Source: Lepidodermella squamata (Eukaryota > Animalia > Gastrotricha). From it: a stretch of DNA of 64,000 nt. Under the pieces are notes generated by a model that was given only the letters and a program-made list of their open reading frames with translations, ran no database searches and was not told the DNA's origin. Location: positions 3,720,001-3,784,000 of the forward strand of contig JBLDXI010000003.1 in NCBI GenBank assembly GCA_047495785.1, read 5' to 3'. This document shows, piece by piece, positions 20,938 through 57,082 of this stretch. Made by a program: the position numbers and the translations under genes. Numbering within the stretch: position 1 is the first letter of the stretch; every line of letters begins with the position of its first letter.

Positions 20938-23900
20938 TTAGTGTTCGTCTATACTTTCGGAGCGCTTAGCAGTGAATTGTTTTTTTCGCTGCCTCACCTT
21001 TTGGGCGTCTTCATCGCTTTCGTCGACCATGGCGTAGTTGCTTGCTTTCGGCCGTCTAAACGCGACGAAACGAGTAGTGACCGCATGCCATTGCGCTCGA
21101 GCTGCAGGGCTTCGAAATTCGGTAGCACTTTGGTGATGGGACGATTTTTCATCAAAAGAAGCACGGCTATCCTCTCCACCGCTTTCGTTGTCCCGATCAT
21201 GCCCAGCGCCGTCATTGAATAATTCATTCTCCATTTTTAGCAGAATCGCTTTCAGGACGTCCTGCTGGGTTTCAAACTTCGATCCTAAGCCGGTCAAATG
21301 GCGAGACTGCATCGTGAGCTCTTCCAGCAGATAGGCGAAATCCGTTTTACTCTCATCACCCTCGGGATCTCCATCTGCATCTCCACTCCCACTATTTTTC
21401 AGTGACGATTTGATTTTCTAGGGAAATCAGGAACTTATGTATCGAAATGACATCGAAAATTCGAACTTACCTCCAAAAATTTGAACCCAGATCTGTTAGG
21501 ATAGAACTTCCACTCATCGAACAAACGCCTGATTAGGAAAGATCTCGGAAGGATCCTCTCCATTCCTGTGAAGAAATCAACTTGCATCGCTAGCCGCTTC
21601 AAGCGAGCATTCTTCTGGACTGACTCAATGTTACCGACGGCAAGACCGACAAGAAGATTTGTCAACAAAATAGGGATCAAAACGATGAAAATGACATAGA
21701 ATATATAGGCCAAGGCTGGGTATAGAAGCTCTCGCTCTCCATTGATAGTCGGGCTGATGAGATTGACGTAATTCAACTCTCCCAGCATCATGGCCATTGT
21801 TGCGATGATTGAGACAAACGGGTCGTTGAATTCAATCGTAGGGCCATCGGTCGCTCGAAATACGACAGAAAGTGTCAGAGCAAATGCAATGAGAATAAAA
21901 CTGAAAACGACTAGAACTCGAATGACAGTTTTGAAAATCTCCACGAACATCACAATGTAGATACCAAAGAAATCAAATCTTTTGAGTAAAAGAGAAAAGC
22001 TTAGAGCGAAAGTTATTCGTGGCGATTCTCACCTTTGAAGGTACAGTAATAGGTTCACCCAACCAAGGAACAAGCAGATCACGCTTGAGATGAACTGGAG
22101 GTCATATTGCTCCATTTGTATGAAAGAAGGGATCGTCATGCAGTACGTTGCCACGTACAGTATTGCCTCAATCCAATGCGTGAAGTCGAAGAAGAAGGCT
22201 ACCTTTTGCTGGGCTAAAGAAAATAGCTGCATTCCAGAATTTACAAGACAGAATATCGCAACTAAGGCCATTCGAATGACAAGCGACTGTTCAATCAATT
22301 CTCGATTTTCCTTTAAAAGACGCAGGGCTATGATTCTAGGCAAGACTTAGGACAGAATTCACTCACGTATTTGACCGGAAAATGTAGCGCTGTCTCGTTG
22401 CTGTCTTCATTAAAATGGCTTGTGGACTCCGAAATGTTGGAGAAGTTGTGAAAAGTAGCATTCCACGATGTCGGTTGATCCTCTTTGGGTTTGCAGTCTA
22501 TGCATTTGATGTTTGCAATAATGTCGTCAACGTCGTAAGCCACCGAAGTCAATAGAGCCAAAAATAGGAAATAGAGAGCTGAAGTGAAGCAATTTAGGAA
22601 CCGAGTAAGTATCAAAGAATTCTTTACCAACCTATTCTGAAATTATACACAAGCGCTCCGTATCCGACCCATTTACGCTGAAGAAAGTTCACGCAAAGGG
22701 GATGCGAAAGGCAGTCAACTCGGTTATACTTCACCATCATCTGATACGAAGATGTCAGCCTGAAATTAGTAAATGGTTGCAACAACTTACATTCAGAGGT
22801 AACAGCGGCGTTATTTTGAGATCCTTGGTTGCCTGGGCGGATTCGATCAAATGCTCAGGAGTCTTCAAGTATCGGAAATCGTAACGCATGTAGAAGTCTC
22901 GACTTTTCTTGTTAGTCGCTGCGAACGTGATACATTTATCCAGAAAAAGGATGCAGATTTTCGGCAAATGCTGGATCAAACCAAGCAGTGGTGATCCCAT
23001 CGTGCTGCGAAGTTGCATCGCCTCTTCGCATCTCGCGTGTCGAATCACTGCGGCTGCAACGTCTGTTCGAAAATGCAGTATTGCGAGATCGAGAAAAGTA
23101 TGGCCGTCAGAGTTATAGTCAAGAGTCGCCTCAGCGGTGAGGAGATAATCGACAATTAAGGCATGGCCGTTTTGCGACGCAAGGTGTAGGGCAGTATTGC
23201 CAGCCTTATTCGTAGTATTCAGAAGGTGAGGAGCTAAACCAACCAAAAGCATCACAGATTCGTGATTTCCATACTCCGCAGCTAAAAAAAATCCGATCAA
23301 AATAGCTTCAGTGATTACTATTAGTCAATTTACCCATGTGAAGCGCCGTGTTTTGCTGGAAATCTTTGCTCATCTGAGCACCTTTTCGCACTAGTAGAGC
23401 AATCACTTTATAATGGCCGTACATAGAGGCAACGAGAAGAGGGGTCCTGCCTTCTCCATCAACCTCATTGATCAACAGAGCCCCCTGTTCGCTGTTCAAC
23501 AAGTTTTTCGCGGTTTGAAGCTTGCCATGCCTAGCAGCGAAGTGAAGAGGTGATTGCTTCTCATTGTCTTTCAACGTAACAGTCGCCCCAAGCTCCAGTA
23601 GACTTCTGACTGTTGATAGTTGCCCGGCTTTACTAGCGTAGTGGATTGGCGAGCACCCAAAATCGTCGCGTTCGTTCAGAAGTTGCTTTAAAGTCTTGAC
23701 GCTACTCAGCTCAAGTTCCCTTACTTTCACTCCATTCATGATTGCAAGATGAAGAAAGTTCCTATTATCCTTATCTCGTAGGGTGGTATTAGCTCTTCTG
23801 CGTAACAGGCAGTTGATTGTTTTGACCGCGCCCTTCGAAGCAGCAAGGATCAGCGGGGTCCGCCTCTCGCTGTCCTGAACATTCAAAGCGGCGCCCGATT

Positions 23901-25123
23901 CAATAAGGAATAGAACTGCATCGACGTGGTTGAACCCGGCCGCTTTGTGAAGCGGGGTCTGATCTAAGATGTCGCGGCTACCAATGCTTGTCTCCACCTT
24001 ATCCGGGCAAGCCAGGAACATTGCTTTGATGATGTCAACACTGCCCTTGGACGCAGCATAATGAACAGCGGTTTGCTTGTCTTCGATGTGATGAGCATTG
24101 ATGTCGGCCCCAGCTTTCAGACAAACCATTACGGATTTTAGGTCACCACTGTTGACAGCGCTGTGTAGAGGTAAGTTATTTTCGCCGTCAATGGTGTGGA
24201 TCAATGTTTCTCCGCTGATATCTTTCTGCGCCGCTGCAAATATATCGTAAACGGGTGAGATTCATCAACTTCAAGAATTTCTACTAACCGTATTCGATGA
24301 GGACATCGACGACTTTTGCCGATCCATTTCTAACAGCGGCATGAATCGATGAATAACCAATGTCGTTATTTCTGAACATATCAGCCCCCTCTTGCAACTA
24401 CAAACATCAACATTTCGACCCAATGCTCAGTTTTTAGTCGTAACTTACCAAATATCTTGCGATTTCTGGCATATCACCAGCACAGGCATACTGCAATGGA
24501 GTGAAACCGAAATCTCCAGGCAGCTCGAGAGACTCGCGGTCCAATTCAATGATGATCTGAACAATCGCAAGTTTGTTGGTCAGAACTGCTGCATGTATAG
24601 CAGCCGATGAGTTGTTATTGCGAATTTTAGTCTCAGCGTTGTGTTTGATGAGCCATTCAACCGCATTAGCATGGCCCCGATCGATGGCACATAGCAGCGG
24701 GGTGTTGCCAATCTTATCGCGAAAATTCATGTCAAAGTAAGGCGACCCATTGTAAGTGAACAAAAAGTCAAGAACTGGCATTCGAGCCCAAACCGCGGCG
24801 TGGTGGAACACGTTTTGACCTCGTATGTCGCGAACAGCCAGTCGTTCTTCGTCTTCACTGAGCAGACGCTGAACTTCCTCCAGGTTGCCTTGTGCCGCGA
24901 CTTTGAGAATGTAGTAAGGAGATTCGTCGTAATGGCAAACAGTCTTCTCCTTATGGCCGACATCGCTCTGTTCGTCCAATTGCGATTGGTTAAGATGGAC
25001 GCCGTCGCGACTTGAAAATTCCCCATTTCTCTCTGGGTCATCGGCAGTCGTCACAGTGATTTCTGCATCGGATGACTTTTTCCCGAATAAGCAGGATAGA
25101 AATCCTGGTTTTTTCGCAGCCAT
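20938..25123 (-). CDS. TRPA1: TRPA1-like channel, copy A
   Basis: Long ankyrin array, HPLC..FLQRKW pre-S1, six TM segments, filter MMLGELNY, S6/TRP-like NLLVGLAVGNIESVQKNARLKRLAMQV, C-terminal coiled coil. Confidence 0.93.
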
Positions 25124-25256: not shown

Positions 25257-28200
25257 TTACAAGACCTGTGCGAAGGCTGAGACAACTGGAGCACTCGTGT
25301 CATTTTCTTGTCCATTATCCTCTTCATCTTGAGTGAGCCAAATATTCGTCATTGGCTTGCGCATATTGGCCAAGCGCTTGTTAATTGCATGCCAATGAGC
25401 TTCGGATTTCGCTGACCTAAAAATCGAGGATTCATCCGTTGCGCGTCCTCGTTTCTTTCCGCGATTGGCTTCGTTCTCATCAGCTGAATCCATCTCACGC
25501 TCGACCTGCTTTTTGCTGCTGAGGAGAATGTCGAGTTTCCTTTGAATCATTTTAACCATCTCACGATGCAGATCGAATCTTGCGTTTAGTTCCGCAATTC
25601 TTCGTCCGAGCAATGCCAATTCTTGTTGGATGAAATGCATTTGCTCTGAATCTTTGTCGAAAATATGGTCGTCTGCAGATCCAAGGGATCCACTGAGATG
25701 AAACCCGGCCAGCTTCTTCAGCTTGCTCCATAACCCTTTGTCCTTGTGATTAGGGTAGTATCTGAATTCGCTCAGTTCTCTCCTTAGCAAGAAAGAGTTC
25801 GGTAGCCTTTGCTCAAGGTCGGTAAAGTACAGGACTTGAGTTGCCAAGCGCTGGAGCTTCGCGTTCTTCTGCACAGACTCGATGTTGCCAACTGGAAATC
25901 GCATTCTTTAACATTTCATTAATAAACATCTCATATCCTCACCTGCCAAACCAATCAAAGCATTTTTAACCAGAATTCCAATCAAAACGAGAAACAAGAC
26001 GTAAATTAAATATGTGAAATCCTTAAAATACGGCACGTGTTTCAGCTCTCCCTTGAAGCTGGGTTTGATGTAATCCGGAAAATTAACGTCTCCCCACATC
26101 ATCGGCAGAAGGGCAAATAGCGACTCTTGCGGCGTATGGAAATCGGCAATGTGACCGGTTGGCGTTCCGAAAGCCAGGGAAAATGTCAATGCAAAGGCGA
26201 TCAGGACAATCGAGTAAATGAAAAGTACGCGGATTAAAGTTTTAAAGATTTCTCGAAACATGATAATGTAAAGACCGAAAAAGTTGAACCTGGGAAAGAT
26301 ATTTTAAAATTTGTCAAGACAGCAGAAGCTCATAATACGAACCTTTGCATGAGGAATAGGAGGTTAAACCAGCCTAAAAATATTGCTAATGCGCTGGCAA
26401 TATACTGGGCATCGGTCGCATCTGTTTCGGTGTAAATCGGTATGGAGAACACCAAAATCGATGTGTAATAGGTTAGGTCGATCAAATTCTTATCGGTAAT
26501 AAAAAGGCAGTCAACATAGGGAAGTTACCTGAGAAATGTGAGTTACCATGATATCGAAAAAATATGTGATCTTCTGTTGAAAAATGAGAAGCACGTGCAA
26601 AAAGATGTTGATTACGCTAAATGCTGTAACGATGATCAGTCTAATGAGAAGTCCGTTTTTGAGGAGATCCTTCAAAAATATACACAATTTCATCAGGATT
26701 GTGTTATCTATTTGTGCTAACCAAAGTGTACGACTCTGCCGTGCTGTTCTTTTTCGCCTGGATCGAGTCCTTCAAGGCGTGGACAGAGTCCGCATAATCC
26801 TTCGTTCCGTCATATGCAAGCCAGTTGACCAATAACAGCGATACAACAAATATAATGAGTTTTGAATTGTAGACGAGGGAGCCAAACGAATTCCTGCAAT
26901 AGATCATGATCAGTCCTATAAATCAGATATGTTTGCTCTACCGAACCATTTTTGATTGAGAAAGGTGACGCACAGCGGGTGGGCCAAACAGTTTACACGG
27001 TTGTAGCGAACCATCATCTGGTATATTAAATTTTCAGTAGCCAATTCGAAAATTTAGGGGAACTTACGGTTAAAGGCCAGAGCGGAACAACTTTGCAAGC
27101 TTTTTCGATCTTCTTCCCTATCAAATCTGGAGGGGTCTGAAGATAGCTGAAGTCGTAGCGCATATGATAGTAGTAGCTTTTGCGATTTTCCTCGGAATAC
27201 TGCATGCATTTGTCCAAAAACACGACGCCCATAGCAGGGAGGTGCATGATAAGACCAATCAACGGCATCCCGAAAATACTAGGCTGTTGCATAACCTCCT
27301 CCCAGCGTTTGTGTCGCATGATGGCTCCTAAGATATCAGTATGACTTTTCTCCACTGCTAAATCAAAAAATGACGCTCCGTCGTTATTCCCATGCAACTC
27401 GGCATCATTTGTCAACAAATAGTCAACCACGAGGGGATGGTTGTTCAGTGCAGCGAGATGAAGAGCGGTGTTTCCAAGCTGATTACGCTGATTCATCGAA
27501 TTGGGAGCCAGGGTTAGCAGTAGCATGACAGCTTCAAAGTTGCCATACTCTGCCGCTAGAGTTTTTCAATCAACAGATTTACACTCAAATTATGGAAAGG
27601 ATTAAAGTTACCAAGGTGTAAAGGGGTGTTCAGTTCGTAATCTTTTGTCAGCTGACCACCTGCCCGGAACAGCATGTTGATTATGTCGGCATAGCCATAC
27701 GTCGCGGCAAAATGAATCTGAAACCGCTTTTGTACAATTTAGAAGGAGGGATTAGTGTTTCAAACTTACGGCATTTCTTCCAACACTGTCTGTTGATGAT
27801 AACAGAGCTTGGTCCGAATAGACAAGCATTTTCGAAGCGTAAAACCGTCCATATCTGGCGGCTGTATGCAATGGTGTCTGAAAACCAATAGGTTATCACA
27901 GCAAAATATCAATGAGGTAAAAATCACTTGAAATTCTTTGTCTTTGACCAAAAAGTCGCAATCAAACTTTAGTAGGACTCTCAGGTTTGTCAAATGACCG
28001 GCTTTACAGGCGTAATGAACTGGCGTGCAGCCGTAATCATCCTGCTCGCTGATTAGCTCATCGAAATTCGGAATATATTCGATATTAATAGCAGTCAGCT
28101 TCATGCCATTGATGACGGCAAGATGTAGGAAATTCCGCTCGTCTTTATCTCTCATGGTAACATCCGCTTTGCTTTTGAGAAGATAATTCACAACTTTAAG

Positions 28201-29774
28201 CGCATTTTTCGACGCGGCTGATATCAACGGAGTTCGATTTTCGCTATCTATTGCATCAATATCTGAACCCATAGCCAAAAGATACGAAACTGCATCCAAT
28301 TGGTTGAATGTTGCTAAAGAGTTTGAAATTAAGAATGGCCTAGCATTTCAAACTCACGCTTACCAGCTTTATGCAGTGGGGTTTGCTCTAGAATGTCCCG
28401 TTGAGAAACACATAGGCTAACTTTCTCCGGCTGGGCCTCGAACATAGCCCTCAACAAATTAAGGGCGCCTTTTGTGGCCGCGTAATGAATCGCAGTTTGA
28501 TTGTCTTCAGTGTGAAGGGCTGAGATATCCGCGCCGGCTCTCAGGCAAACGCTCACAGCGGTTAAATCGCCCGAGTTGACAGCCCCATGCAGTGGAAAGT
28601 TACTGTCCTTGTCAAGCGTATGAATCAAGTCTTTTTCCGTCATTCCTAGATATTTCCCTGTAATTAAATAAAAGATGAAAGAGCTTGCCAAAAATTACCA
28701 AAGAAAGATTACCAAATTCAAAGAGGACTTCAACGATATTAGCACAGCCATATCGTGTTGCGCAATGGATAGCGCAATAGCCAAGATCGCAGTAATACAT
28801 CAGATCAGCGCCTTGCTCGAGCTATAGGAAGTCTTTAACTCAAATTATCCTAAAGTCTAGTAAACAAACCAGGTATCTAGCAATATCCGGTCTGTCATGT
28901 TTGCAAGCGTAGAGGAGAGGAGTGAATCCCAGATCACCTGGGTAGTGAATGATTTCCGGATCAACCTTCGACATAATCTGTAGTTCAGTGATTTTAGAAC
29001 AATTCCAAATACCGGGTAAAGGATTACCTTCAGCCAATTCAAATTGCCATTTTCGACGGCGACGTGGATCGGTGCTTGATTTAATACATTTTTCACTCTC
29101 ATGTTCGCCCCATGGGAGAGGAGCCATTCCAAGGCAGTCACATGTTCACCTTCAACCGCGTGATGCATCGGGGTATTTCCAAGTTTGTCCTGATCATTCA
29201 AATCAACAATGTCGATGTCAACGAAATTGAATAAGAAATCCAGAACATTCAAATGTGATCCATGTGCTGCGTGATGAATAACATTCTGGCCGCGAAAATC
29301 TTGAACAAGAAGAGTTGATAGGTCCTTTTTGACCAATTTCGTCACCTCTTCAAGATTCCCTTGCCCTGCCATTCTTAGAATTAACGTAGGCCCGTCGTCC
29401 TTTTTAACATGCGGTAATCTGACTGCCGGAAATGCTTTTGAGAGCCTTTTACCAGTCGGGAAGTCGACTGATTCTCTGAACTGTACAGACGATCGCCGCG
29501 AATGCCTGTCAACCTCTGTGCTGACTGATGGTCTTTGGCTTGACTGAACTGAAGCAGTTCGCTGTTCATCTTCGTCGTACTCCTCGAGAAATACCAACGA
29601 CTGTCCTGCGTCAAGAACTTGTGCGATTCTGTGGCGTAGCGACGATTTTTTACGCTTCTGTTCATGGAAAATGGACTCGAGGCTTGACAGTAGTCCATGG
29701 TCGACTTGGGGATGATGCGAGGGACCTGAAAAACTGTTCCGGGGTGTCCTCGTGCCTGCTTCTGGACTGTTCAT
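25257..29774 (-). CDS. TRPA1: TRPA1-like channel, copy B (most divergent, most introns)
   Basis: Ankyrin exons join in phase where traced; filter PMMWGDVNF; S6 LVKNALIGLA/VGNIESVQKNAKLQRLATQV; extended Ser/Arg-rich N-terminus. Confidence 0.9.
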
Positions 29775-30792: not shown

Positions 30793-32180
30793 CTATTGAA
30801 AAATATTTCCCTGCAAGCCCGTTTCCTGATGGCTAGACCCAAGCTGGAGAAGACTTTTGTTCGAATCGCTGAGGCTCCGTCGTAGTGTATGAGGAGGGAA
30901 GCGCTCCAGCATTTGCTGACGCAGTTCCATGACCAAGTGATTTCTTCTCGCCAGAATAGGATGCGCTTCACAAATGGCGTTGAGCGAAATCATGAGCTTC
31001 GACCCAGTCTTTCTGAGACTCACGACTGCCTGCAACAAATAATCAAGTCGGCTCTGAGTTATGTCCGATTTTCCTGTTTTAGTGCAATAGGAAGTGAATT
31101 GAGAAGTTAGCTGCTCGAACACTCCAGCAAATGAACCATTTCGTGTATTGCCCCATTTTCCATCTATAATGGAGCGCAGTGGAAAGTGGAAAATGAATCC
31201 CATGGTTAAGAAGTGACATACAATTGTGAAAGTAGAGAAAAGCTAAAAGGAACACGAATTCAACTTTATCGAGGCCAAGCGATTGTAGCATTGAACGCAG
31301 CATTTGCGTCTCTTGCATTAGGAACTGGAAGAACAAGCTATTTTTCACGTTGACCAATAGGGATTGCCTTACCCTGACACCGGGGAAGTAGAATGACGTG
31401 ATCGCAAAATTGTGCTCATTCATCCCACCAAGAACTGTGTCGGTGCTATAGCAGTTTTCTGCGATAAGAATCGGGAAACAGCTACTGAGAAACAGCTCTT
31501 TCCGATCGTCAATGTGTGCCTCGTTGTAGCCTGGTATTGAAGAAAGAAGCTTTCGAACCATAGTCAGCTGAGGCACGAAATGATTGTCAGCAATCTCAAT
31601 GAGCACATCTTCCCGACTCTGATTGATGGTAAAGACGATTTGCTTCCGCAACTTTAGCTAAGGTGAAACGTAAAAAGGTCGAAGGGTTCGAATATTGACC
31701 TTGTTGGAGCTTACATTGTTAGCCGATTCGAGAAGCTGTTCGGCTGCAGCAGCGAATACTGTAGTTTGACAGGAGTTTTCAGCGCGATCTGTTTGCGTCT
31801 CGGGCATATTAGGGCTGATGGACCTTTTGTATTCAAGGCTTTCCCGCTCGTAGTAACGCGAATTCATGCCGATGTTAACGCATTTGGCAAACCGACAGGC
31901 CGAGCAGGAGAAACGCCACTTCTTGCCCGCCGAAGTGACGACTGTCTCGGTTTTAGCGACATCTAAGCAGTTTTGGCCGGGGGAGTTAGATGAGCATTTG
32001 AGCTTGCGGTTATTGGGTAATTGGCGAAGGTAGAACCGACGACAAGCTTCGCAGACCATCGCGTTGTTCCTCATCTTGCCCTCTGTTTCCACGCCACATA
32101 CCTGTGAATATGACTGCATGCACTATCGATATGGTATGATTAGGAAAACTCACCTGACATTCAGCTGATCCTAAATGCAT
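30793..32180 (-). CDS. Divergent nuclear hormone receptor 1 (C4 DBD + LBD)
   Basis: MHLGSAECQ/VCGVET..VCEACRRFYLR..C..C..CSACRFAKCVNIGM; LBD-like signatures LLSSIPGYNEAHIDDRKELF and LGLDKVEFVFLLAFLYF. Confidence 0.85.
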
Positions 32181-41299: not shown

Positions 41300-42671
41300 T
41301 TAATTGAAGATGTCCTGCAGTAATGTCGACGGAAAAAGTGTCAAGATCCGCATCCCCAGCCCCATAGTTTGCGGATTGCGCTTCATGGCTGTCGACGTAT
41401 GACGTATTAGCGCTTGGTTTGATTTCATGCGTCGATATCCAGCACTGGCAAAAGCCTCCACAATTTTGCCCAGTGTTTCCATTCGCATTTTGAAGCCATC
41501 CGTATCTTTCACCTTGCGTTCCCGCAAACAGTAAGCGTGATATACCTTCGTTAGCTGCTGATAGGCTTTCTCTGTTGAATGGCTATCAGATGGGCTCCAC
41601 TTCTCCTCTGCATCGTAATTAGAATAAACTAAAACAGTGTTATATCGGAAAACTTACTGTTGTAAAGATATAGAAATACGACTAGGAAGAAAAATTCGAC
41701 AGCGTCCGTGCCCCATGTATCCAAAACACATCGCAAGTGCTCTGTTTCTACGAGTATGTACTGCTTTTATAATTAAATAAATCTAGAGATAGATGACATT
41801 GAAAGCGAACCTGATGTTCAGGGAACAGCGGTATCACTGTCAGAAAATTTCTTTCAGTCATGCAGTTGTATACTCTCTCGCCGCTGTAGCAGTTTTCAAG
41901 AATTGAAATCGCGTAAAGACTAGTAATAAAAGGTTTCCACTCCCCGCTAGCACTGGGAGTTTTGAATCCTATAGCTGTGTTGTTGAATTTAAATCAAATA
42001 TTGGACGAAAATAAAATGAACTCCTCACCTGTAATCGCGGAAAAGAATTCAACAACCAGCGCGATTTGTGGGCTGAATTGATTACGTAATACCTCGATAA
42101 GAATGTCCCCAGAACACATATTTGGTGAAAATTCGACGTCTTTTCTAAGGAGTAGCTGAAAAATCCTATCTTTGGAACATTTCAAGGTGATGAAGCGGCT
42201 ACTTACGCTCTTGTAAGCTTGGATCATCTTCTCCGAGGCGGTAACGAATGAAGTCAATTGCTGTTCAACTCCTACAAGATCAGTTTGTAAATCCGGCGAT
42301 GGACCTGATGTGATACCCGCTCTTGCTTTGACGTATTTCAAGTTTTCCCGAGCGTAGTATTGCGACGACATTCCAACAGCAACACATTTGTCGAATCGAC
42401 AGGCCGCGCAGAAGAAACGGCATTTCCTGCCCCTTGCTGATAAAATGGACGTTTCGTCGAGGCAATGTCGACCGCGGCATTGCAACTTTCGACATTCGGG
42501 AAGCTGGCGAAGGTAAAATCTCCGGCAGGCTTCGCAGGATAATGCGTTATTTCGCAATTTCCCATCAGTTTCGACTCCGCAGATCTACAACGGTAAGATT
42601 CGCTTATACAATACGATAAGGTTATGTTAGGAAAAATCAACCTGACAGAAGTAGGTCTTAGCTGAATCCAT
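41300..42671 (-). CDS. Divergent nuclear hormone receptor 4
   Basis: MDSAKTYFCQ/ICGVETDGKLRNNALSCEACRRFYLR..CAACRFDKCVAVGM; LBD WGTDAVEFFFLVVFLYLY. Confidence 0.83.
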
Positions 42672-43055: not shown

Positions 43056-46000
43056 TCAATCCTTCTGATCGTCCTTCCACAGCTGTCTAACGCTCGGCCT
43101 CCGCGGAACCTCTAATTTCGCGTTGAGAGCATGCCATTTAGCGCTCGACCCAACCGATCTGAATTCATTCGATCGGCGACGTACGCGGAGAACTGATTCG
43201 GCGGGTTGGCATGAAGCCGCTTCTTCTTCCTCAGGGATGCATGGGACCGAGCTGCCCGCGTTGCCCGCGTTGCCCGCGCTGTCAAGCGACTGCATCATCC
43301 TCTTCGTAAGATCTTGTTGCTGCCCCAATTTTGTGTTGGCTGTTGCGATTTTACGAGATTGTTGCGTCAACTGTTCCAGAAGGTAGTTGGCCTCATTCTG
43401 GTCATCATTATCATTGTCAACTTGGAAATCTTCCGATTTGTTGCTCTGTTGGACGGAGCTGAACAGAGACTTCAGTTTCTGTAAAAACACACTTTTCTTA
43501 AGAAGTTTCTAATGCGAAGCATTGATTTACCTCGAGGAACTGATACTTGCTGCGGTTCGGATAGTGATTGAATTCTTCGAAAGAACTTATTCGGTCTTTT
43601 AGGAACTTTGGCAAAGCCCTCTCCAGGAAAATGAAATACTCGACCTGCATTGCGAGACCTTTAAGGCGGGCTGTTTTTCGAACTGAATCGATTCGGCCGA
43701 CCGAAAGACCGACTAACATGTTCATCAGAAGTCGCGAAATAAGCATTATGAAGGCGGTGAAGTAGATATAAGTCAGGACTCCGTATATCAACTCGCGAGT
43801 TCCTTAGAATGAGGTAATCAAGAGTTACAATATTTAGGAAAATAGGCGTTTCTCTTACCATCCAATGTTGGAGAAATGAGATTCACATAATTCGCCCTCC
43901 CAAGCATCATGCTCATAGTTGACATCAATGCGATAGGAATGGTCTTAAACTCCGTCGTTGGACCAGTCTTCGGTAAATCAATGTCATTTTAAGATCCATT
44001 TTAGGAAAGGTGATGGTTATACCTTTGTTTTGAACACAATCGAAAACGATAAAGCAAAGGCGACTATGATGAAGCTGAACACGGCTAGAAGTCGTATCAT
44101 AGTTTTGAAAATTTCAACGAACATGATTGTGTATATTCCAAACCAGTCGTATCTGCGTTCATGCTTATGCTTACAGTGATTAACAATGAATTTGAAACTT
44201 ATACCGTTGCATTTGCATGAAAAATACAATCCATCCAAGAAGCAAGGAAATCGCTGCGCAAATGATTTGCTGCCTCGGTGTTACTACGTCCACGGAGTAG
44301 AATGGCAACAGGGCAAGGTACGTCGTAATGAAGAGACTCCATTCGAGGTAATTCTAAAGAGGATAGACGTCAAATGGCTTGGTCAATCTCAGCCGCCAAA
44401 AACTTACATGGTAATCCAGGAAATACAACACTTTCTGTTGCCACATGGAGAACAGGTGGACCATTATATTGATTCCGGTGAATGAGGCAACCAAAATCAT
44501 TCTAATAAAAAATCCGAAGCCGACGTAATTCGCAGACTGGGTGAAAATTTTGTTAGCAGGAGAATCAAGGCTGTTCAAGATTATTTACCATCCCCTTCGG
44601 AAAATGTCCATCAAGACTGTACTGAGTCATGTTTGTGCTGTTCACAGAGCTATCGACAGCTTGCAGAACGGCATTTTCTACATCGAACACCAATGTAGTC
44701 AACAAAGCTAGGAAAATCACGTAGATCCCAACGCGACAGTTGTACACTTTGGCCCCAAAGGAATTCCTGCAAAAAAACGGAAATTGTGACGAAACGGTCT
44801 TCTCGAATTTAGATTTAAAGACCATTTTTCTCGGAGAAACGTAACGCAAAGTGGATGACTGAGGCATTCAGTTCTGCTGTACTTAACCATGGTCTGGAAA
44901 AAAGTCAGGCATTGAAGATTTCAAAACTTATAGTCGAATTTTACCGTCAACGGGAGAAGCGAAGATATTTGCTTCGATGATTCCATCAAATAAGTCGGAG
45001 TCTTTAGGTATCGAAAATTGTACCGCATGGAAAAATCTCTGTCGTTCTTATTCCCATCAGAATATGTCAGGCACTTGTCTAGAAACATGACTGCAACTTT
45101 TGGCAAGTATTGAATGAGGCCGACCAATGGAGTTCCAAAGGTGCTCACAGCTTCCATAGCCTCATCGCATCTGCTATGGTTGATAACGACAGATGCTGTA
45201 TCCGCTTGAAATTTCATGATTGCAAGGTCAAAAAACGAGGCGCCGGCGTTGTTTAATGTGATCTCCGCTCCAACCGTCATCAGATAATCAACAACAATAG
45301 GGTGTCCCTTGAGGGCTGCAAGGTGAAGAGGGGTTGAACCGTCTACATTGGCCGCATCCAGGAGATGAGGAGCGATACTTATCAGAATGACGACAGCTTC
45401 GTATTGACCGTTCTCAGCTGCGACATGTAGGGGGTAGTTTTGCCTGAAATCTTTTGTGATTAGGGCTCCTTTCCCGACTAGGAGGGATATAATCTTGTAC
45501 TGACCGTATTGACTAGCAACATGCAAGGGTGTTCTCCCGAGGTTATCAGGCTCATTCATTAGTAAAGACCCATGCTCACTCTGCAGAAGATTCAGGCAGG
45601 TTTTAAGCTTCCCAAACTGGGCAGCAAGATGAAGTGGGTTGTTCTTCTCATTATCTTTCACTGTGACCGTCGCCCCTAGCTGGATTAGTCCTCTAAGAGT
45701 GTTCAACATCCCAGCTTTCGATGCGTAATGCATCGGGGTGCAGCCTGCGTCATCTTTTTCGTTAAGCAACTGGGTCAAGTTCTTCAACGGGGTCAGATCA
45801 AACTCTTTAAGAGGAGCGGAGCTCAATATTAAGATGTGCAGGAAATTTCGATTATCCTTATCTTTGATTGCGGTATTTGCGCGACGCTTTATCAAAAAGT
45901 TGACCGAACGGCTCGCGTTTTTCGACGCGGCTAAGAGAAGCGGTGTTCGCCGCTCGCCGTCCTGGGCATTTATCGACGCGCCTTCATTAATCAGGTGCTC

Positions 46001-47845
46001 AACAACCTCGGCATGGTTCATCATAGCGGCCTTGTGCAGGGGCGTCTGCTCGAGAATGTCTCGGCTATGGATGCAGGTCTCGCGCCGCTCTGGCTGCGCC
46101 TCAAACATCAATTTTATCATCTCAAGACCACCCTGAGCCGCGGCGTAGTGAATCGCCGTCTGTCGATCATTCGGCTGTTGCGCGTGGATTTCTGCCCCAG
46201 CTTGAAGACACACTTTCACCGCTTTGACGTCTCCAGAGTTGACAGCTGCATGAAGTGGCATGTTTTCCTCGTTGTCAGTCATGTGAATCAAAGCATTGCG
46301 CGTCAGACCGCGTCGCTCGGCGAAGTCGAGCAGAACATCAATTACGTTGGCAGATCCGTTCCGTGTCGCCGAGTGAATTGGCAACAAACCCACCTCGTCA
46401 CGCCTCAGTAGATCGGCGCCTTCTTCGAGCTGAACATGAAAAATATAAGTCACAAATCCCTAAAATACCCCTAAGTTTCTTACCAAGAATCGTGCTATTT
46501 CGGGAAAATCTTTCGCTGACGCAATGTGGAGAGCTGTTGCCCCCAGATCACCCGGCAGATTAATATTCCATGAGTGTCGGCAAACCATCAGCTGTAATGG
46601 AACATTTAAAGAATTAGAATACTTCAGAACGTTGTACCACTATAATGAAGCATGACAAATTGCGCAAAAAGAGCAAAAAAAGAATATAATATCATGGGCA
46701 AGAGGATAAATAAGAAGCCCACCTTAAAATCTCCACATTAAAAACTTTTCAACTTTCAAACCTGTTAAGATTGAAAATCAGAAGAATGGTCTGTGTAGAT
46801 ATAAATGCTCTGCTCACCCGTTAGATACAGTTCAGGGTTAAGAGGCCAATAGAGGGAGTTTACTATTGTCCCGCATGAATAAGCCTTCCTTGCATAGATC
46901 TAACATGATAATGCAAGGTCAATGCATGGGAATGTATGGGAATGTATGATGGACCTGTGGTCAATGCACAGAGATGCATGGAGATGCATGGGCTTTTCGA
47001 TCATGCATTCCCAATGTTCAGCAAGACAATGTTCAAGTTTTATGCCTAGGATACACTCGGTAATCTGATTGGGTTTTCAAAAATTCGTTACAAGATTCTT
47101 CCTCATTTGGTGAATAAGGAGACAAAGGAAGACAGTTTAAGACTTCAGGCTTTTAGTGAAAGCTGGCTTCAAAAGTGTTAGCCCAGTCCTCAGCCCAGAC
47201 ACAAAGGAATATGTATAGATTAAAACTAACCTGAATCATCTCCAAGCGACCCATCTCAGCGGCGTAGTGGATTGGTGCGAAATTTTGCAAGTTCTTCAGG
47301 TTCAACTGAGCGTTATGATCCAGCAGCCACTCAACGGCCTGGAGTTGGCTCCTCTCGATTGCCCAGTGGAGTGGCGTGTTGCCCATTTTGTCTTGAACAT
47401 TCAACGGCACATTGCGAGCACACAGCCAGTCCAAAACGTTCACACTAGACCATGTGACAGCGTGATGAACAGCGTTCTGACCTCGGTAGTCGCATAATGT
47501 CAACCGGCTCGGATCATCCTGGACCAAACGAATAACCTCGTCGAGATTGCCTTGCGCCGCAAATTTCAGAATGTCATAGCGTGCCTCTTCAAAATCACAC
47601 TGAAATGTTTCGCGTTTCCTTTTCATCTGAGCTGAAACTCTTGGATGAACAGCGTGACGAGCATCACCTTTTGAAGTTGAATCATTTATCCAGGCACTGC
47701 TCCTTCGAGAAACTCGACGGTATAAGTCTTGGAAAATTCCTACTGGAGAGTTCTCCATTGTAACGTGAACTCTGCTATCCGAAAGGTTAATTTGTGTCAG
47801 TGAGGGACTGAACCGTTTTTCGTCAGCTTTCAGCCTATGAGTCAT
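43056..47845 (-). CDS. TRPA1: TRPA1-like channel, copy C (Arg-substituted pore)
   Basis: Start at 47845 or 47758; ankyrin array largely in one ~1.5-kb exon; transmembrane exons join in frame; filter MMLGRANY; S6 ISRLLMNMLVGLSVGRIDSVRK. Confidence 0.92.
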
Positions 47846-52042: not shown

Positions 52043-55000
52043 TCAAATTTTAATTTCAGATATAGACAATGCGTCTTTAGTGTTGTCGGTACTTCGCGCC
52101 GAACTCGGCCGACGGTCGATGCCCAGCCGTCGACTGTGGCTGTTACCGCGTGATGCTTTTTCGTCGCTGTTCGAAAACCAAAGTTGGCTGGCTTTCGGCT
52201 TTTTGATCGCCGCAAATCGGGCGGCTACAACGTGCCAGTGGGCCCGCGAGCCCGACGAGTGAAATTCGCTGGAATTAATACGCTTCCTTATGCCATTCTT
52301 ATGGCCATGCTCGCCGTACAAGCTGATATCGTCCATGTCACAGTTTTCATCCTCGATTTCGTCATCACCGAATTCGTCCGCATCGCCGAATTCAGTTTCG
52401 ATACGCTGCATCAGCAACTTGAGCATGTCCTGTTGCATGTCCAATTTCGACGTGACCGACGTCATTTGCCGCGATTGTACCGTCATTTCTTCGAGCAGAT
52501 ACGCAAAATCATTTTTGCTCTCAATATCGCCATCAAAATCGTGATCACTTGATTGGTCGAGGTTATAGAATTCACTGACAACGCCGCGAAATTTCTAGAA
52601 AAAAATATGATTCATTAATTAATTTATAAAATTTTAAATCTCGAAAAATCAATATCAATTTGGTGATTCATTGAAAAGCGAAATTTTTAATGAGCTGAAT
52701 TATTTATTACCTCGAGAAACTCGTACTGCGATCGGTTTGGAAAGCATTTATACTCGGTGAAGGCGTAACGGCGGCGGAAACACATCGGCAATCGGTAAAG
52801 TTTGCGCTCGAGCAGCGTGAAGTACTCGACCTGCATGGCGAGTCGCTTCAGGCGCGCGTTTTTCTGAACGCTTTCAATGTCGCCAACCGCAAGACCGACC
52901 AACAAGTTCATCAGCAGCGTCGGGATCAACATGATGAAAACGATGAAGAAGACGTAGGTCAAATCACCGTAAATTAGCTCACGCCGACCTGATGTGGGAA
53001 AAAAACAATAAAATAAATGTCACACATTTTGATTGAAAGTTTGTTTGACTCACCGTCAAGACTTGGCGTGATGATGTGAACGTAATTCGCTTCACCAACC
53101 ATCATTGATAGAGTTGTCATCATAGAAATCAGCGGGTTTTTGAACTCTTGCGTTGGACCACGCTGATTAAAATAAATGAATTTTCGTGATATATATTTTA
53201 AGGAGGAATTTTTCAAATTACTGTTGTGCGGAAAACCATGTTGAATGATAAACTGAAGGCGATGATGATGAAGCTGAAGACAACCAGTGCTCGCATTAAG
53301 GTTTTGAAAATTTCGATGAACATGATGACGTATAGGCCGAAGAACTCGAATCTGAAATTCAAAAAATTGATAATGCCGCAATTTTTTCGATAAAAAATTA
53401 TGCGAACCTTTGCATGTATAGTAGCAGGATTATCCACCCTAACAATAGGGAGATAGCGGCACATGTCAGTTGGTAATGGATATCCAGGCAATTGTTCTCC
53501 GAGAAAAATGGGAAAATTGCGAAAAATGTCGTGAAGTAAAGCGTCCACTCAAGATAATGCTGAAAAATTAAAGAAAAATTTGAAATTATCAACAATAAAT
53601 TAGGCGGGTGTCTCAGTCGTTAGGACACTAATTTTGAGTTCTCAATTTTTTTCAGAGTGTTTTGGGATTTTACCAAAAAAAACCGAAAATTCCCGACAGC
53701 TCAAGATTTTTCATCGCTCTGATTTCTTTGAATTTTTCAATCATTATTAATATTTTATATCAAAAATAATATTTTATACCGTAAATTCGAGAAAATAAGC
53801 CAGCTTTCTCTGAATGATTGAGCCGACATGAGCAAGCACATTGAATCCGCAAAATGCAACAACAACCAGCATTCGCATGAACATGTTGTTAGTTATCGTT
53901 TTCATACTCTGCAATAAAAAAAGACGAGCAATCGATTTTTTTTTAGTCCCCACGAATAACTGAAGCATACCAAATTGCTGCTCACTGACGGGTGACCATT
54001 TGCGTCTATGCGCGCTGTACTATTTAACGTTTCATTTTGAATTTGCATCATCGAAGTTGTTCCAGGTGTCGCAGACACGTGGTCGTAGTCTAACGGGGAG
54101 GCTTCGTAGTCGTAGCCTGAATGGCGGATAGGTCCCGGCGGATTGTTGATAACTATCGAGCTGTCAATTTCCAGAGCTACTGATGTCAGAAAGGCTAGGA
54201 AAACCATGTAAATCCCAACGCGTAGGTTATAGAAGACAGAACCGTACGTATTCCTGGAAAAAAATTCGCGTGAGTTATTGGGTACAAATTCCTAAATTAG
54301 ATTTCGAACCAACCATTTACGCTTGAGAAAAGCAACGCAAACAGGGTGAGCCAGGCAATCAACGCGATTGTATTTAACCATCATCTGGAAAAATCGACAA
54401 AAACTATAATATTACCCTAAATTATTGCGAAAAATACATACATTCATCGGCATTAAGGGCAAATTTTCCAGTTTATGCTCGCTTTTCCTGCTCTCGAAAT
54501 CGTCCGGAGTTCGAAGGTAGCGAAAATCGAATCGGATGTAAAAATTGCGGCTCTTTTTGTTCTCGTTTGAATAAGTCAGGCATTTATCCAGGAATAGAAG
54601 CGCAACTTTCGGCAAATTTTGAATCAGACCAATCAGGGGTGTTCCAAAGGTGCTTCGCAGCTGCATGGCCTCCTCGCAACGGCCGTGGTTGATGATAGCA
54701 GCCGCGGCATCGGCTTGAAATTTCGAGATGGCCAGGTCGAAAAAAGTCGCGCCATCGTCGTTGACATCGAACGTTGCTTCAGATGACATCAAGTAGTCGA
54801 CGACCAGGGCGTGGTTGTTCAAGGCAGCCAGGTGTAAGGCGGTGTTGCCCTGTTTGTTGCCGTTGTTCAAGAGATGAGGCGCGAGGCCGACTAGCAGGAC
54901 AACGGCTTCGTGGTGGCCGAACTCGGCGGCCAGGTGCAGAGGCGTGTTATGCATGAAATCTTTATTCATGAGTGCACCTTTGCGAACGAGAAGCGCAATG

Positions 55001-57082
55001 ACCTAAATAATATGAAAAAATAATTTAAAATTGTTTATGATTAAAATTAAAATAGGAAAATCTAAAATTGCAAATAAATTAAAAAAATAAGAAGGTTTAC
55101 AATTATTAAAATAAATTGAAATTTTTTTTAGAAATTGAAGAAATTTATTACTGCCTAAATTTATTTATTTTTCAATTTTTTCAAATTTCAAATTAAATTA
55201 GCAATTTTAAATTTAAATTTTTTATTATTAATTTTTTTCATCTTTTCATTATTTACTCATCTCAATAAAAAAAGTAATTCATACTTTTAACATACCTTAT
55301 AGTGGCCATATTGGCAAGCCGTGTGTAAGGGAGTTCGACCATCGCCATCAATTTCGTTGATCAAAAGTGACCCATTTTCGGAACTCAACAAATTTCGACA
55401 CGTCTGTAGCTTGCCGTATTTCGCCGCTAAATGCAGCGGGTTCTTCTTGTCGTTATCCTTCAACGTCACCGTCGCGCCGAGTTCGAGCAGGCCGCGCAGG
55501 GTGCCTAGTTGCCCAGCCTTAGACGCGTAGTGCATCGGCGTGCAGCCGAAATCGTCCCGTTCGTTGAGTAGCAACTTCAGATTTTTAATCGCCCCCAGGT
55601 CGATATCTCGCAACTTTGACCCGTTCAAGATCAAAATGTGCAGAAAATTACGGTTGTCCTTATCCTTCAAATTCGTATTAGCCCGGCGGTTAAGGAGGAA
55701 ATTGACCGAACGACTCGCGTTTTTCGACGCGGCTAGGAGAAGCGGTGTTCGCCGCTCGCCGTCCTGGGCATTTATCGAAGCGCCTTCATTGATCAGGTGC
55801 TCAACAACCTCGACGTGGTTCAACATAGCGGCCTTATGCAGGGGCGTCTGTTCGAGAATGTCCCGACAATGGATGCAGGTCTCGCGCCGCTCTGGCTGCG
55901 CCTCAAACATCAGCTTTATCATCTCAAGACCACCCTGAGCCGCGGCGTAGTGAATCGCCGTCTGCCGATCATTCGCCTGTTGCGCGTCGATTTCTGCCCC
56001 AGCTTGAAGGCAAACTTTCACCGCCTTAATGTCACCAGAATTAACAGCTGCGTGAAGTGGCATGTTTTGCTCCTTATCAGGCATATGGATTAAGGCGGAT
56101 CGAGTGATCCCCTTTTGCTCGGCGAATTCTAGAAGGATATCGATAACGTTAGCCGAGCCATTTCGGGTCGCGGAGTGGATCGGAGGGCATCCAACGTCGT
56201 CTCTTTTATTCAGATCTGACCCATTTTCCAACTAAATTGAGGTGGGAATAATAATTAAACTCAATTGCCCAAGTTTCGAACTTACCAAAAATCGAGCTAT
56301 AGCCGATGAATCCTTAGAGGCGGCAACATGTAGAGCCGTAGCACCCATATCACCGGGTATATCAACCGTCCAAGGATTTTTCTGGACGATCATCTGATGA
56401 AAAAATGATATAAAACTAGAAAATCCAGCTTAATACCCCGACTTACCTTGACCATTTCAAGGCGCAAAAGTTCGACAGCATAGTGGATTGGCGTGTGATT
56501 TTGGTTATTTTTCACGGCCAAATCAGCTTTATGGTCGAGAAGCCATTCAACCGACTTGATTTGATTCTTTTCAATCGCCCAGTGCAGCGGGGTGTTGCCC
56601 AACTTATCTCGCGCATTGATATCAACATTATGCGGGATTCCATACGTTTCAAGGTGGTCCAATATATGAATCCTTGACCATGTAACAGAATGATGAACCA
56701 CATTTTGGCCTCGATAGTCGCGGACTGTCAGGCGGTTTCGATCCTCTTGGATTAGCCGTGTTACTTTCTCCAGATTACCCTGAGCCGCTACTTTCAGGAT
56801 ATAGTAGGGTGACTCATCGAATAGGCAAACTAATTTTTCGGTCGATTTCTTAGACGGTATAACGCCTCGCCCAGTGTCGATCTCGATTTTAGGCGGCAGG
56901 TCTTTCTTGCCAGCTGTAAAGTCGTACTCGCTGATTTTCGCGACTTCAATCTCGCCATTCGGTGTATCAACACTGCTGCTTTCACTGCCAGTTGGGCTGG
57001 TTGCTCGATTGAAAAATCGAGTGTAAAGACTCGCTAGTATACTCTGACTAGAGCCTTTAGGTGAATTTTTCTTCATAACCAT
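52043..57082 (-). CDS. TRPA1: TRPA1-like channel, copy D (most canonical)
   Basis: Ankyrin array; HPVCVAFLKRKW; filter MMVGEANY; NLLVGLAVGDIESVQKNARLKRLAMQV; coiled coil and acidic cluster DADEFGDDEIEDE. Confidence 0.94.

What the first reader, a model, noticed from the sequence alone, without database searches (positions are those of the whole stretch)
43670..43970. TRPA1 paralogue with a charge-reversed pore: candidate anion-permeable or modulatory TRP subunit
Seen: copy C has Arg at four aligned positions where copies A, B and D are acidic or neutral. These are the filter MMLG-R-ANY (AGG, 43896-98; A GELNY, B GDVNF, D GEANY), mid-S6 IS-R-LLMN (43732-34; D IPTLLMN), the inner mouth VG-R-ID (43693-95; D VGDIE) and SV-R-K (43678-80; others SVQK). 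The transmembrane exons still splice in frame, and several of these changes need more than one base substitution, which argues against sequencing error or simple decay. Established: human TRPA1 D915 (MMLGDINY) sets Ca2+ permeability, I957 and V961 form the lower gate, and characterised TRP channels are cation channels. The sites align to about D915, I950, D963 and Q968. Inference: a homotetramer would have stacked rings of positive charge along the ion path, giving anion permeation (an inhibitory TRPA), or copy C could be a non-conducting or Ca2+-limiting subunit in heteromers with its neighbours. Counterpoint: copy C also loses one Arg in the TRP-like helix (LKR to LKG).
Basis: partly seen in the sequence, partly recalled or inferred. 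Interest (0 to 1): 0.92.

Follow-up and report, generated by a model that had tools for sequence, protein, structure and literature searches.

The report
TRPA1 paralogue with arginine pore filter
One of four neighbouring TRPA1-type sensory channel genes in this invertebrate is intact, transcribed and under purifying selection, yet has arginine where almost all relatives keep the acidic residue that attracts calcium, so its pore very probably does not conduct like a normal TRPA1, though how it conducts is untested.

Summary
Copy C (minus strand, 47758-43056, 11 GT-AG exons, 1193 aa) has Arg at the human D915, I950, D963 and Q968 positions, and Gly at R975.

DNA contigs of one run and spliced transcript contigs of a second run show the same pore-exon codons. 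Differences specific to copy C are 11 synonymous to 1 conservative. It is therefore neither an error nor a decaying gene.

Only part of the "four stacked rings" reading survives:
- Arg at Q968 is ordinary (51 of 150 relatives, including Drosophila TRPA1).
- I950 lies in the S6 pi-bulge and lines a ligand pocket in human TRPA1.
- D963 sits off the gate face by helix periodicity.
- The filter Arg is unique among 128 relatives.

New here: copy C probably belongs to an old sub-clade, with two genes from metagenome contigs of a related animal. These share an unpaired S6 Arg, Ser for the invariant Ala960, and loss of the filter acid (Asn there). Clade support is moderate.

The pore looks remodelled under selection. 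My best guess is a calcium-impermeable, low-conductance or pore-modifying subunit. Anion permeation is possible but untested.

The scan had not noted this feature on other DNA. A Cav2 pore-lysine note exists elsewhere in this genome.

The parts
43056..47758 (-). Copy C, complete coding region: 11 exons, 1193 aa. Exons: 47758-47231, 46591-46484, 46429-44945, 44893-44823, 44766-44589, 44536-44408, 44353-44205, 44152-44023, 43967-43859, 43802-43531, 43478-43056.
   Evidence: Model assembled. All introns are GT-AG and 51-56 nt, except intron 1 (639 nt). Seven junctions are seen as spliced joints in run X2. My spliced aligner reproduces the model. Pfam finds ankyrin repeats in exons 1 and 3.
43859..43967 (-). 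Pore-helix and selectivity-filter exon of copy C (TGPTTEFKTIPIALMSTMSMMLGRANYVNLISPTLDG).
   Evidence: X2 transcript contig shows no difference here.
43896..43898 (-). Codon AGG = Arg950, at the position of human D915 (upper gate, selectivity filter).
   Evidence: It is the only Arg at this position among 128 TRPA relatives.
43531..43802 (-). S6 and TRP-like-helix exon of copy C.
   Evidence: Best matches among solved structures are TRPA1: 7YKR at E=3e-12 and 6V9V at E=1e-9.
43732..43734 (-). Codon CGA = Arg986, at the position of human I950 (S6 pi-bulge). The preceding Ser985 replaces human P949.
   Evidence: Arg at this position occurs only in copy C and in the C-like genes P0018/L001 and P0005/L005.
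43693..43695 (-). Codon CGA = Arg999, at the position of human D963.
   Evidence: Among 150 relatives this position is D in 139 and N in 11, never R.
43678..43680 (-). Codon CGA = Arg1004, at the position of human Q968. This state is ordinary.
   Evidence: Arg occurs here in 51 of 150 relatives, and Drosophila TRPA1 (7YKR) reads SVRR.
43657..43659 (-). Codon GGT = Gly1011, at the position of human R975 (basic residue of the TRP-like helix).
   Evidence: Among 150 relatives this position is R in 130 and G in 2.
52157..56851 (-). Copy D, the nearest paralogue, with a canonical pore (MMVGEANY, LIPTLLMN, VGDIESVQK).
   Evidence: Spliced alignment gives 1162 aa with no stop. An orthologue, L006/P0001, exists in the related animal.
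25317..29751 (-). Copy B (MMWGDVNF, VGNIESVQK), with an extra intron inside S6.
   Evidence: A B-like orthologue is P0014.
21013..25027 (-). Copy A (MMLGELNY, VGNIESVQK). S5 through the TRP helix lies in a single exon, 21978-21471.
   Evidence: Pfam Ion_trans scores 55.6 bits on that exon. An A-like orthologue is P0002.

Best explanation
Copy C is a working gene of the TRPA1 family. It most likely belongs to an old, fast-evolving sub-clade ("C-like") within a lineage-specific set of four TRPA1 paralogue groups. In this sub-clade the ion pathway has been remodelled and then kept by selection.

Shown:
- The gene is intact, spliced and transcribed.
- Its polymorphism is almost all synonymous.
- Its ankyrin domain and gate scaffold stay conserved.
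- Substitutions at otherwise invariant sites concentrate in the pore.
- The unpaired S6 Arg, Ser for Ala960, Ser/Thr for Pro949 and loss of the filter acid are shared with C-like genes of a related animal.

Inferred:
- Arg950 removes the ring of negative charge that attracts cations and sets Ca2+ permeability, and replaces it with four bulky positive side chains at the narrowest external point.
- A pore containing copy C subunits should therefore be Ca2+-impermeable and of low conductance.
- The most likely role is a pore-modifying subunit. It may act alone or in mixed tetramers with canonical neighbours such as copy D, which is transcribed in the same sample. This would resemble arginine-edited GluA2 in AMPA receptors.
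- Arg999 and Gly1011 probably retune the S6/TRP-helix gating junction rather than line the pore.
For: Gene integrity and transcription:
- 1193-aa open frame with GT-AG introns.
- Spliced contigs in run X2 at seven junctions, and no X2 depth inside the 639-nt first intron.

Selection:
- Differences specific to copy C are 11 synonymous to 1 nonsynonymous (D81E). The chance of this under neutrality is about 7e-7.
- The C-like gene of the relative shows 20:5, 16:4 and 4:2 synonymous to nonsynonymous differences between haplotypes, with none of the nonsynonymous ones in the pore.

Where the changes fall, at sites at least 85% conserved across 18 outgroup TRPA1s:
- Ankyrin domain: copy C departs at 3 of 57, copy D at 2.
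- S5-S6: copy C departs at 5 of 14, copy D at 1.

Sub-clade:
- Copy C groups with L001 and L005 (SH-aLRT 90).
- Support is 77/81 after removing the pore columns and the conversion tract.
- Sixteen clade-specific positions are spread over the whole protein. No acidic partner for Arg986 is gained.
- Filters read ILSTNNNY and KFATNNHY in the relatives.

Uniqueness and precedent:
- The filter Arg is unique in 128 relatives.
- D915 sets Ca2+ permeability (PMC5100928, PMC8151290).
- One added S6 lysine turns TRPM8 into an anion channel (PMC9805079).
- Paralogue D contigs are present in X2.
Against: - No functional data exist.
- The orientation of the Arg side chains was not modelled. Spliced proteins cannot be passed to the structure tool by reference, and it returns no coordinates.
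- Mixing of subunits with copy D is conjecture.
- The relatives carry Asn, not Arg, in the filter. The filter Arg is therefore known from this one lineage only.
- Support for the C-like clade is moderate once the pore columns are removed (77/81).
- Synonymous divergence between paralogues is saturated, so no branch test of selection was possible.
- The list of differences from the reads tool was truncated (32 not shown).
Confidence: 0.48

Rival explanations
1. A homotetramer of copy C is an anion-permeable TRPA channel, which could act as an inhibitory sensor. Arg950 in the filter and Arg986 facing the central cavity would invert the pore electrostatics.
For: - The filter acid is replaced by Arg.
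- Arg986 is conserved across the C-like genes and has no acidic partner, so it probably needs water around it (my inference).
- On a regular helix it lies on the same face as the lower-gate residues, at i+7 and i+11.
- Precedent: TRPM8 V976K is an anion channel (PMC9805079).
- From my own knowledge (Burnashev et al. 1996), arginine-form AMPA and kainate receptor homomers pass chloride.
Against: - The lower-gate position that converts TRPM8 (equivalent to human TRPA1 I957) is Val in copy C.
- Human I950 faces the ligand pocket in the pi-bulge state (PMC6926016).
- The outer-pore acids Asp and Glu after the filter are kept, as in copy D.
- There are no electrophysiology data.
Confidence: 0.15
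2. Copy C does not conduct. It acts as a pore-dead or dominant-negative subunit, or as a sensor or scaffold that uses its ankyrin domain and gating machinery without carrying current.
For: - Four Arg side chains at a constriction about 7 A wide (PMC8151290) could occlude it.
- I950A in human TRPA1 loses function or expression (PMC6926016).
- The ankyrin domain is highly conserved, and part of it is homogenised with copy D.
Against: - Gate and TRP-helix invariants are still kept: N990, G994, L995, V997, G998, I1000, Q1015, E1023 and P1027.
- The pore exons show only synonymous differences. This suggests the pore itself is still under selection.
Confidence: 0.2
3. Copy C is an essentially ordinary non-selective cation channel. 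The Arg side chains point away from the ion path, and carbonyl oxygens or other acids maintain cation permeation.
For: - A few natural TRPA relatives lack the filter acid (LGN, LGG), usually with an acid two or three residues later.
- TRPA5 channels work without Gly914 (PMC10993193).
Against: - Copy C has no displaced acid in GRANYVNL.
- D918A alone already lowers Ca2+ permeability (PMC5100928).
- A positive residue at the filter is a much larger change than those natural variants.
Confidence: 0.12
4. Copy C is a decaying or unconstrained duplicate, or the Arg codons are assembly or sequencing errors.
For: - Copy C departs at several otherwise conserved pore sites.
- The C-like branch evolves faster: copy C to L001 is 41% identical, against 68% for copy D to L006.
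Against: - The 1193-aa frame is intact.
- Correctly spliced transcripts exist.
- The codons are identical in two independent runs.
- Differences are 11 synonymous to 1 nonsynonymous.
- The signature residues are shared with another animal.
Confidence: 0.04

Closest known systems
[quoted passage not shown]
   Same: - Long N-terminal ankyrin repeat domain and a six-helix channel domain.
- Pore helix with the MMLG motif.
- S6 motif N-x-L-x-G-L-x-V-G, with hydrophobic lower-gate residues (V993, V997).
- TRP-like helix.
- Among solved structures, TRPA1 entries are the best matches.
- It sits inside the TRPA1 clade in the tree.
   Different: - Arg replaces the filter Asp/Glu.
- Ser-Arg replaces Pro-Ile at 949-950.
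- Ser replaces Ala960.
- Arg replaces Asp963.
- The basic residues R975 and K989 are lost.
GluA2 (arginine form at the Q/R site) of AMPA receptors
   Same: A tetrameric pore-loop channel subunit with Arg at the narrow tip of the pore loop. From my own knowledge, this makes mixed channels Ca2+-impermeable and of low conductance, and makes homomers partly chloride-permeable.
   Different: It is an unrelated family. In GluA2 the Arg comes from RNA editing, whereas here it is encoded in the genome and the transcript is unchanged. Mixed assembly is not shown for copy C.
Engineered TRPM8 V976K and TRPM2 S6 mutants (Kuhn et al. 2007, as cited in PMC9805079)
   Same: A single added positive residue in S6 of a TRP channel switches it from cation to anion permeation. 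This shows the fold tolerates such an inversion.
   Different: The engineered site aligns with the lower gate (human TRPA1 I957), which is Val in copy C. The positive residues of copy C sit in the filter, the pi-bulge and below the gate. Copy C is also a natural gene, not a mutant.
Insect TRPA5 (RpTRPA5B, PMC10993193)
   Same: A TRPA-family channel with a non-canonical filter: Gly914 is absent, or is Ser/Thr in most non-hemipteran TRPA5 proteins. The C-like relatives L001 and L005 resemble this with S-T-N and A-T-N.
   Different: TRPA5 keeps the filter Glu and is a separate TRPA subfamily. Copy C keeps the Gly but loses the acid.

Membership tests
TRPA1 subfamily of TRP channels | Long N-terminal ankyrin repeat domain | tested here: met
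   Pfam finds Ank_2, Ank and Ank_4 on exon 3 (E=1.9e-66) and on exon 1 (E=1e-19).
TRPA1 subfamily of TRP channels | Six-helix channel domain with a pore loop, most similar to TRPA1 among solved structures | tested here: met
   The S6 exon hits 7YKR at E=3e-12 and 6V9V at E=1e-9. Other channels score far weaker. On this short exon alone Ion_trans scores 20.3 bits, below the cut-off. The equivalent single exon of copy A scores 55.6 bits.
TRPA1 subfamily of TRP channels | Placement inside the TRPA1 clade in a tree | tested here: met
   The nine window and metagenome genes form a clade with 100% support, nested among insect, amphioxus and other TRPA1 proteins. The root was not inferred.
TRPA1 subfamily of TRP channels | Acidic residue in the selectivity filter (L-G-D/E; human D915) | tested here: not met
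   Copy C has Arg950 (AGG). Of 128 relatives, 117 have D or E and none has R.
TRPA1 subfamily of TRP channels | Hydrophobic lower gate (human I957, V961) and the conserved S6 Asn (N954) | tested here: met
   Copy C has N990, V993 and V997.
TRPA1 subfamily of TRP channels | TRP-like helix followed by a C-terminal coiled coil | tested here: inconclusive
   The TRP-like helix aligns to human 964-1009, but R975 and K989 are replaced. The coiled coil was not tested. Only the conserved YLLEQLTQQS stretch was seen.
Pore-modifying arginine subunit (works like GluA2 in its arginine form) | Arg at the narrowest point of the pore loop | tested here: met
   Arg950 aligns to D915, the upper constriction (PMC8151290). 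This rests on alignment only, not on a structure.
Pore-modifying arginine subunit (works like GluA2 in its arginine form) | Co-assembly with canonical subunits and lowered Ca2+ permeability | not testable with these tools
   The only relevant observation is that both copy C and copy D are transcribed in run X2.
Anion-permeable TRP (as in engineered TRPM8 V976K) | Positive residue at the S6 lower-gate position (equivalent to human TRPA1 I957) | tested here: not met
   Copy C has Val993 there. The positive residues lie at other sites.

The most novel reading that the evidence does not exclude
The C-like genes are a natural clade of TRP channels with inverted pore electrostatics. There is no filter acid, a conserved Arg in S6 faces the water-filled cavity, and copy C adds an Arg ring in the filter itself. 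Homomers would conduct anions, or at least exclude Ca2+ and most cations. That would make them the first natural non-cationic TRP channels, possibly inhibitory sensory receptors.
Probability: 0.15. Interest if true: 0.9.

Novelty: new variant of a known kind. Interest (0 to 1): 0.68.

Why it matters
All characterised TRP channels conduct cations, and the filter Asp/Glu of TRPA1 is the known determinant of its Ca2+ permeability. Copy C is a naturally selected, expressed TRPA1-clade subunit with Arg at that site. It probably belongs to a sub-clade that shares an unpaired S6 Arg.

This gives a ready-made natural experiment on how TRP pores set charge selectivity. It may also show how sensory channel arrays diversify by changing the pore rather than the sensor.

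The question can be tested directly. The wild-type cDNA, the canonical neighbour copy D and single Arg revertants are all defined by this report.

Tried and rejected
- **More C-like genes.** Three searches found nothing beyond what was already in hand. P0018 found only itself. A profile of the three C-like S6 exons found only P0005. A scan of JGI metagenome contigs matched 600 pattern stretches, none confirmed. The clade therefore rests on copy C, L001-L004 (one gene in four assemblies) and L005.
- **dN/dS between paralogues or with the relatives.** Synonymous sites are saturated everywhere except a conversion tract, so no branch or branch-site test was attempted. I used polymorphism instead.
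- **My first HSP-chaining gene modeller.** It failed because tblastn runs through the 50-nt introns. I replaced it with a spliced dynamic-programming aligner, checked against the RNA-supported model.
- **Structure prediction and pore electrostatics.** Not run. Orientation was argued from the literature (PMC6926016) and from helix periodicity.
- **Differences at codons 272-378.** I first read these as alleles of copy C. They turned out to be contigs of paralogue D, because each alternative residue equals the residue of copy D. I excluded them.
- **Organism.** Not identified. An inositol oxygenase ORF gives at best 63-66% identity to named proteins of bryozoan, nemertean, annelid and mollusc. 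I describe it only as an unidentified protostome, probably a spiralian.
- **Literature on D963.** A search found nothing relevant.
Full report
**1. Observation**

The window holds four TRPA1-type genes, all on the minus strand:
- Copy A: 25027-21013.
- Copy B: 29751-25317.
- Copy C: 47758-43056.
- Copy D: 56851-52157.

In copy C the filter exon reads MSMMLGRANY. The S6 and TRP-helix exon reads FIMLISRLLMNMLVGLSVGRIDSVRKTARLKGLAMQVEY.

| Residue | Codon | Window position |
|---|---|---|
| R950 | AGG | 43898-43896 |
| R986 | CGA | 43734-43732 |
| R999 | CGA | 43695-43693 |
| R1004 | CGA | 43680-43678 |
| G1011 | GGT | 43659-43657 |

At the same sites the paralogues have:

| Copy | Filter | Mid-S6 | Below the gate | After that |
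|---|---|---|---|---|
| A | E | I | N | Q |
| B | D | I | N | Q |
| D | E | T | D | Q |

As written, the codons differ by two or three bases each. HMMER alignment to solved human TRPA1 (6V9V numbering) maps the sites to D915, I950, D963, Q968 and R975. Ser985 aligns to P949.

**2. The gene is real, intact and expressed**

I assembled an 11-exon model of 1193 aa with GT-AG introns throughout. Ten introns are 51-56 nt and one is 639 nt. A spliced aligner that I wrote reproduces this model.

Two public runs hold the locus.
- Run X1 (2024, DNA-like) covers 43274-43943 with no difference.
- Run X2 (2015, a different study) holds contigs that skip seven of the predicted introns exactly. Their ends read CT..AC on the plus strand, which is GT..AG on the gene's strand. 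X2 has no depth across the long first intron. It is therefore cDNA, and copy C is transcribed and spliced as modelled.
- One X2 contig joins S6, the filter exon and S5. It has no difference in the filter exon and three differences in S6 (43716, 43726, 43738). All three are synonymous.

Differences clustered at codons 272-378 turned out to be contigs of paralogue D. Every alternative residue there equals the residue of copy D. I excluded them, and they also show that copy D is transcribed in X2.

With those excluded, the listed differences specific to copy C are 11 synonymous and 1 conservative replacement (D81E). Synonymous sites make up 22% of the coding sequence, so the chance of this under neutrality is about 7e-7. 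One caveat applies: the tool listed only the best-supported differences, and 32 were not shown.

**3. How unusual each site is**

A full HMMER search of 1.84 billion representative proteins with the S6 exon returned 312 hits, of which the best 150 were examined. None was closer than 60% identity. The counts below come, except the filter, which comes.

| Human position | Residues among relatives | Copy C |
|---|---|---|
| I950 | I 125; R only in P0005 and P0018 | R |
| D963 | D 139, N 11, no R | R |
| Q968 | Q 82, R 51 | R |
| R975 | R 130, G 2 | G |
| P949 | P 91, S 36 | S |
| D915 (filter, 128 sequences) | E 100, D 17, N 4, G 3, P 2, I 1, R 1 (copy C only) | R |

- Arg at Q968 also occurs in Drosophila TRPA1 (SVRR in 7YKR). 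That site is ordinary.
- The few relatives that lack a filter acid usually have one two or three residues later. Copy C (GRANYVNL) does not.

**4. A probable sub-clade with the same pore signature**

P0018 and P0005 are gene fragments called on ENA metagenome contigs. P0018 lies on L001-L004, which come from four assemblies. P0005 lies on L005. Spliced alignment gives open frames with no stop in either gene. L001 gives 1133 aa. L005 gives 1013 aa but includes a run of N in the contig.

Both genes share features of copy C:
- In S6 they read M-(S/T)-R-L-L ... M-L-T-G-L-S-V-G-N-I.
- Their filters read ILSTNNNY and KFATNNHY, with no acid and no Gly.

The same metagenomes also hold D-like (P0001/L006), A-like (P0002) and B-like (P0014) genes.

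Maximum-likelihood trees group each window copy with its metagenome counterpart:
- A with P0002: 97-98.
- B with P0014: 99.
- D with L006: 98-99.
- Copy C with L001 plus L005: SH-aLRT 90 on the whole protein.
- The same grouping of C has support 77/81 after I removed the pore columns and the ankyrin conversion tract.

Sixteen positions are specific to the three C-like genes and lie along the whole protein. They include P949 to S/T, I950 to R, A960 to S, Q968 to R, K989 to A, and a coiled-coil E to Q. No acidic residue is gained that could pair with Arg986.

The four paralogue groups therefore most likely predate the split of the two animals, although support for the C-like grouping itself is only moderate. 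On that reading the S6 Arg and the loss of the filter acid are old. The filter Arg itself, Arg999 and Gly1011 are known from the window's lineage only.

Haplotypes of the relative's gene differ by 20:5, 16:4 and 4:2 synonymous to nonsynonymous codons. None of the nonsynonymous differences falls in the pore.

**5. Where the constraint lies**

I took sites at least 85% conserved across 18 outgroup TRPA1 proteins.
- In the ankyrin domain copy C departs at 3 of 57 sites. Copy D departs at 2.
- In S5 to S6 copy C departs at 5 of 14 sites. Copy D departs at 1, copy A at 2 and copy B at 3.
- The gate scaffold is kept: N990, L992, G994, L995, V997, G998, I1000, A1007, Q1015, V1016, E1023 and P1027.

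The changes are therefore focused on the ion pathway and are not spread across the protein.

Copies C and D are 60% identical overall, and synonymous sites are saturated. The exception is codons of about 241-420, where dS falls to 0.27 and nucleotide identity reaches 93% at codons 301-360. This is a gene-conversion tract in the ankyrin domain.

The C-like lineage evolves faster than the D-like one. Copy C to L001 is 41% identical, against 68% for copy D to L006.

**6. Mechanism**

Established from the literature:
- D915 forms the upper constriction, about 7 A wide, and attracts cations (PMC8151290).
- In mouse TRPA1, D918A lowers Ca2+ permeability and D918E raises it (PMC5100928).
- I957 and V961 form the lower gate.
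- I950 lies in the S6 pi-bulge (residues 946-950). It helps line the ligand pocket between pore helix 1, S5 and S6. I950A abolishes function or expression (PMC6926016).
- TRPM8 V976K, at the S6 lower gate, is an anion channel (PMC9805079, citing Kuhn et al. 2007).

Inference:
- Arg950 removes the cation-attracting ring. It puts four long positive side chains at the narrowest external point. Canonical Ca2+ permeation is very unlikely.
- Arg986 has no acidic partner and is conserved, so it probably needs water around it.
- On a regular helix Arg986 shares a face with V993 (i+7) and V997 (i+11). With the pi-bulge present it turns toward the pocket. Its exposure to the cavity is plausible, depends on the gating state, and is unproven.
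- Arg999 is two residues past V997, about 200 degrees away from the gate face. With Gly1011 and Ala1025 it more likely alters the S6/TRP-helix gating junction. The human residues R975 and K989 at these positions contribute to voltage- and chemical-dependent activation, according to PMC8151290, which cites Samad et al. 2011.

My best reading is a Ca2+-impermeable, low-conductance or pore-modifying subunit, possibly in mixed tetramers with copy D. This follows the logic of arginine-form GluA2, which I cite from my own knowledge.

Other readings stay open: anion-permeable homomers, a non-conducting subunit, or a near-normal cation channel. Only recordings and a tetramer structure can decide between them.

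**7. Comparison and novelty**

Copy C meets the TRPA1 criteria for domain architecture, structural similarity, tree position and lower gate. It fails the filter-acid criterion (see the membership table).

I found no report of a natural TRPA or other TRP channel with a basic filter residue. TRPA5 shows that TRPA filters can lose Gly914 and still work (PMC10993193). I class the finding as a new variant of a known kind.

**8. Limits**

- The organism is unidentified. The best named matches to a neighbouring inositol oxygenase ORF are spiralians at 63-66% identity.
- The C-like clade has only three sampled genes.
- Support for the clade is moderate.
- Operator rules were followed.

Noticed in passing
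window 45806-46345 (core 45986-46165) in copy C, against the matching ankyrin exon of copy D (56231-55296): There is a gene-conversion tract between the ankyrin domains of copies C and D. At codons 301-360 nucleotide identity is 93% and dS is 0.27. The rest of the two genes is saturated at synonymous sites. Read depth is also raised here, because contigs of both paralogues map to it.
   Followed up: partly
window 48132-50824, minus strand, between copies D and C: Open reading frames encode Sushi-like Cys-rich repeats, followed by an ankyrin-repeat exon (49097-48135). The ankyrin exon is only 26-29% identical to the TRPA ankyrin domain. This is a separate gene, and the X2 transcript coverage of copy C does not extend into it. 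An earlier scan note (s1-395256) describes it.
   Followed up: partly
window 25892-25942 (copy B), 21471-21978 (copy A), L006 2358-3191: Intron positions in the pore region differ between paralogues. Copy B has an extra intron inside S6 (GLA|VGNIE). Copy A encodes S5 through the TRP helix in one exon. The D-like gene of the related animal has no intron from the filter to the C-terminus. The C-like genes L001 and L005 have an intron inside the pore helix instead.
   Followed up: no
window 41997-42584 and 31661-32122, minus strand: Two ORFs between copies B and C begin with a zinc-finger motif like that of nuclear receptors (CGVETDGK(L/M)RNNA..CEACRRFYLRQ). They appear to be a duplicated pair of nuclear-receptor-like genes interleaved with the TRPA array.
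   Followed up: no
L001 127-741 and 13572-15036: In the related animal the C-like TRPA gene has different neighbours from those in the window. It lies beside a Cys-loop receptor ligand-binding-domain gene and, about 8 kb away, a TRPM-like channel (LSDAT plus Ion_trans).
   Followed up: no
window 17095-17742, minus strand: This is an inositol oxygenase (PF05153) exon. Its best named relatives are spiralian proteins at 63-66% identity, and one unnamed ENA metagenome protein (P0183) reaches 73%. I used it only to place the organism roughly.
   Followed up: partly
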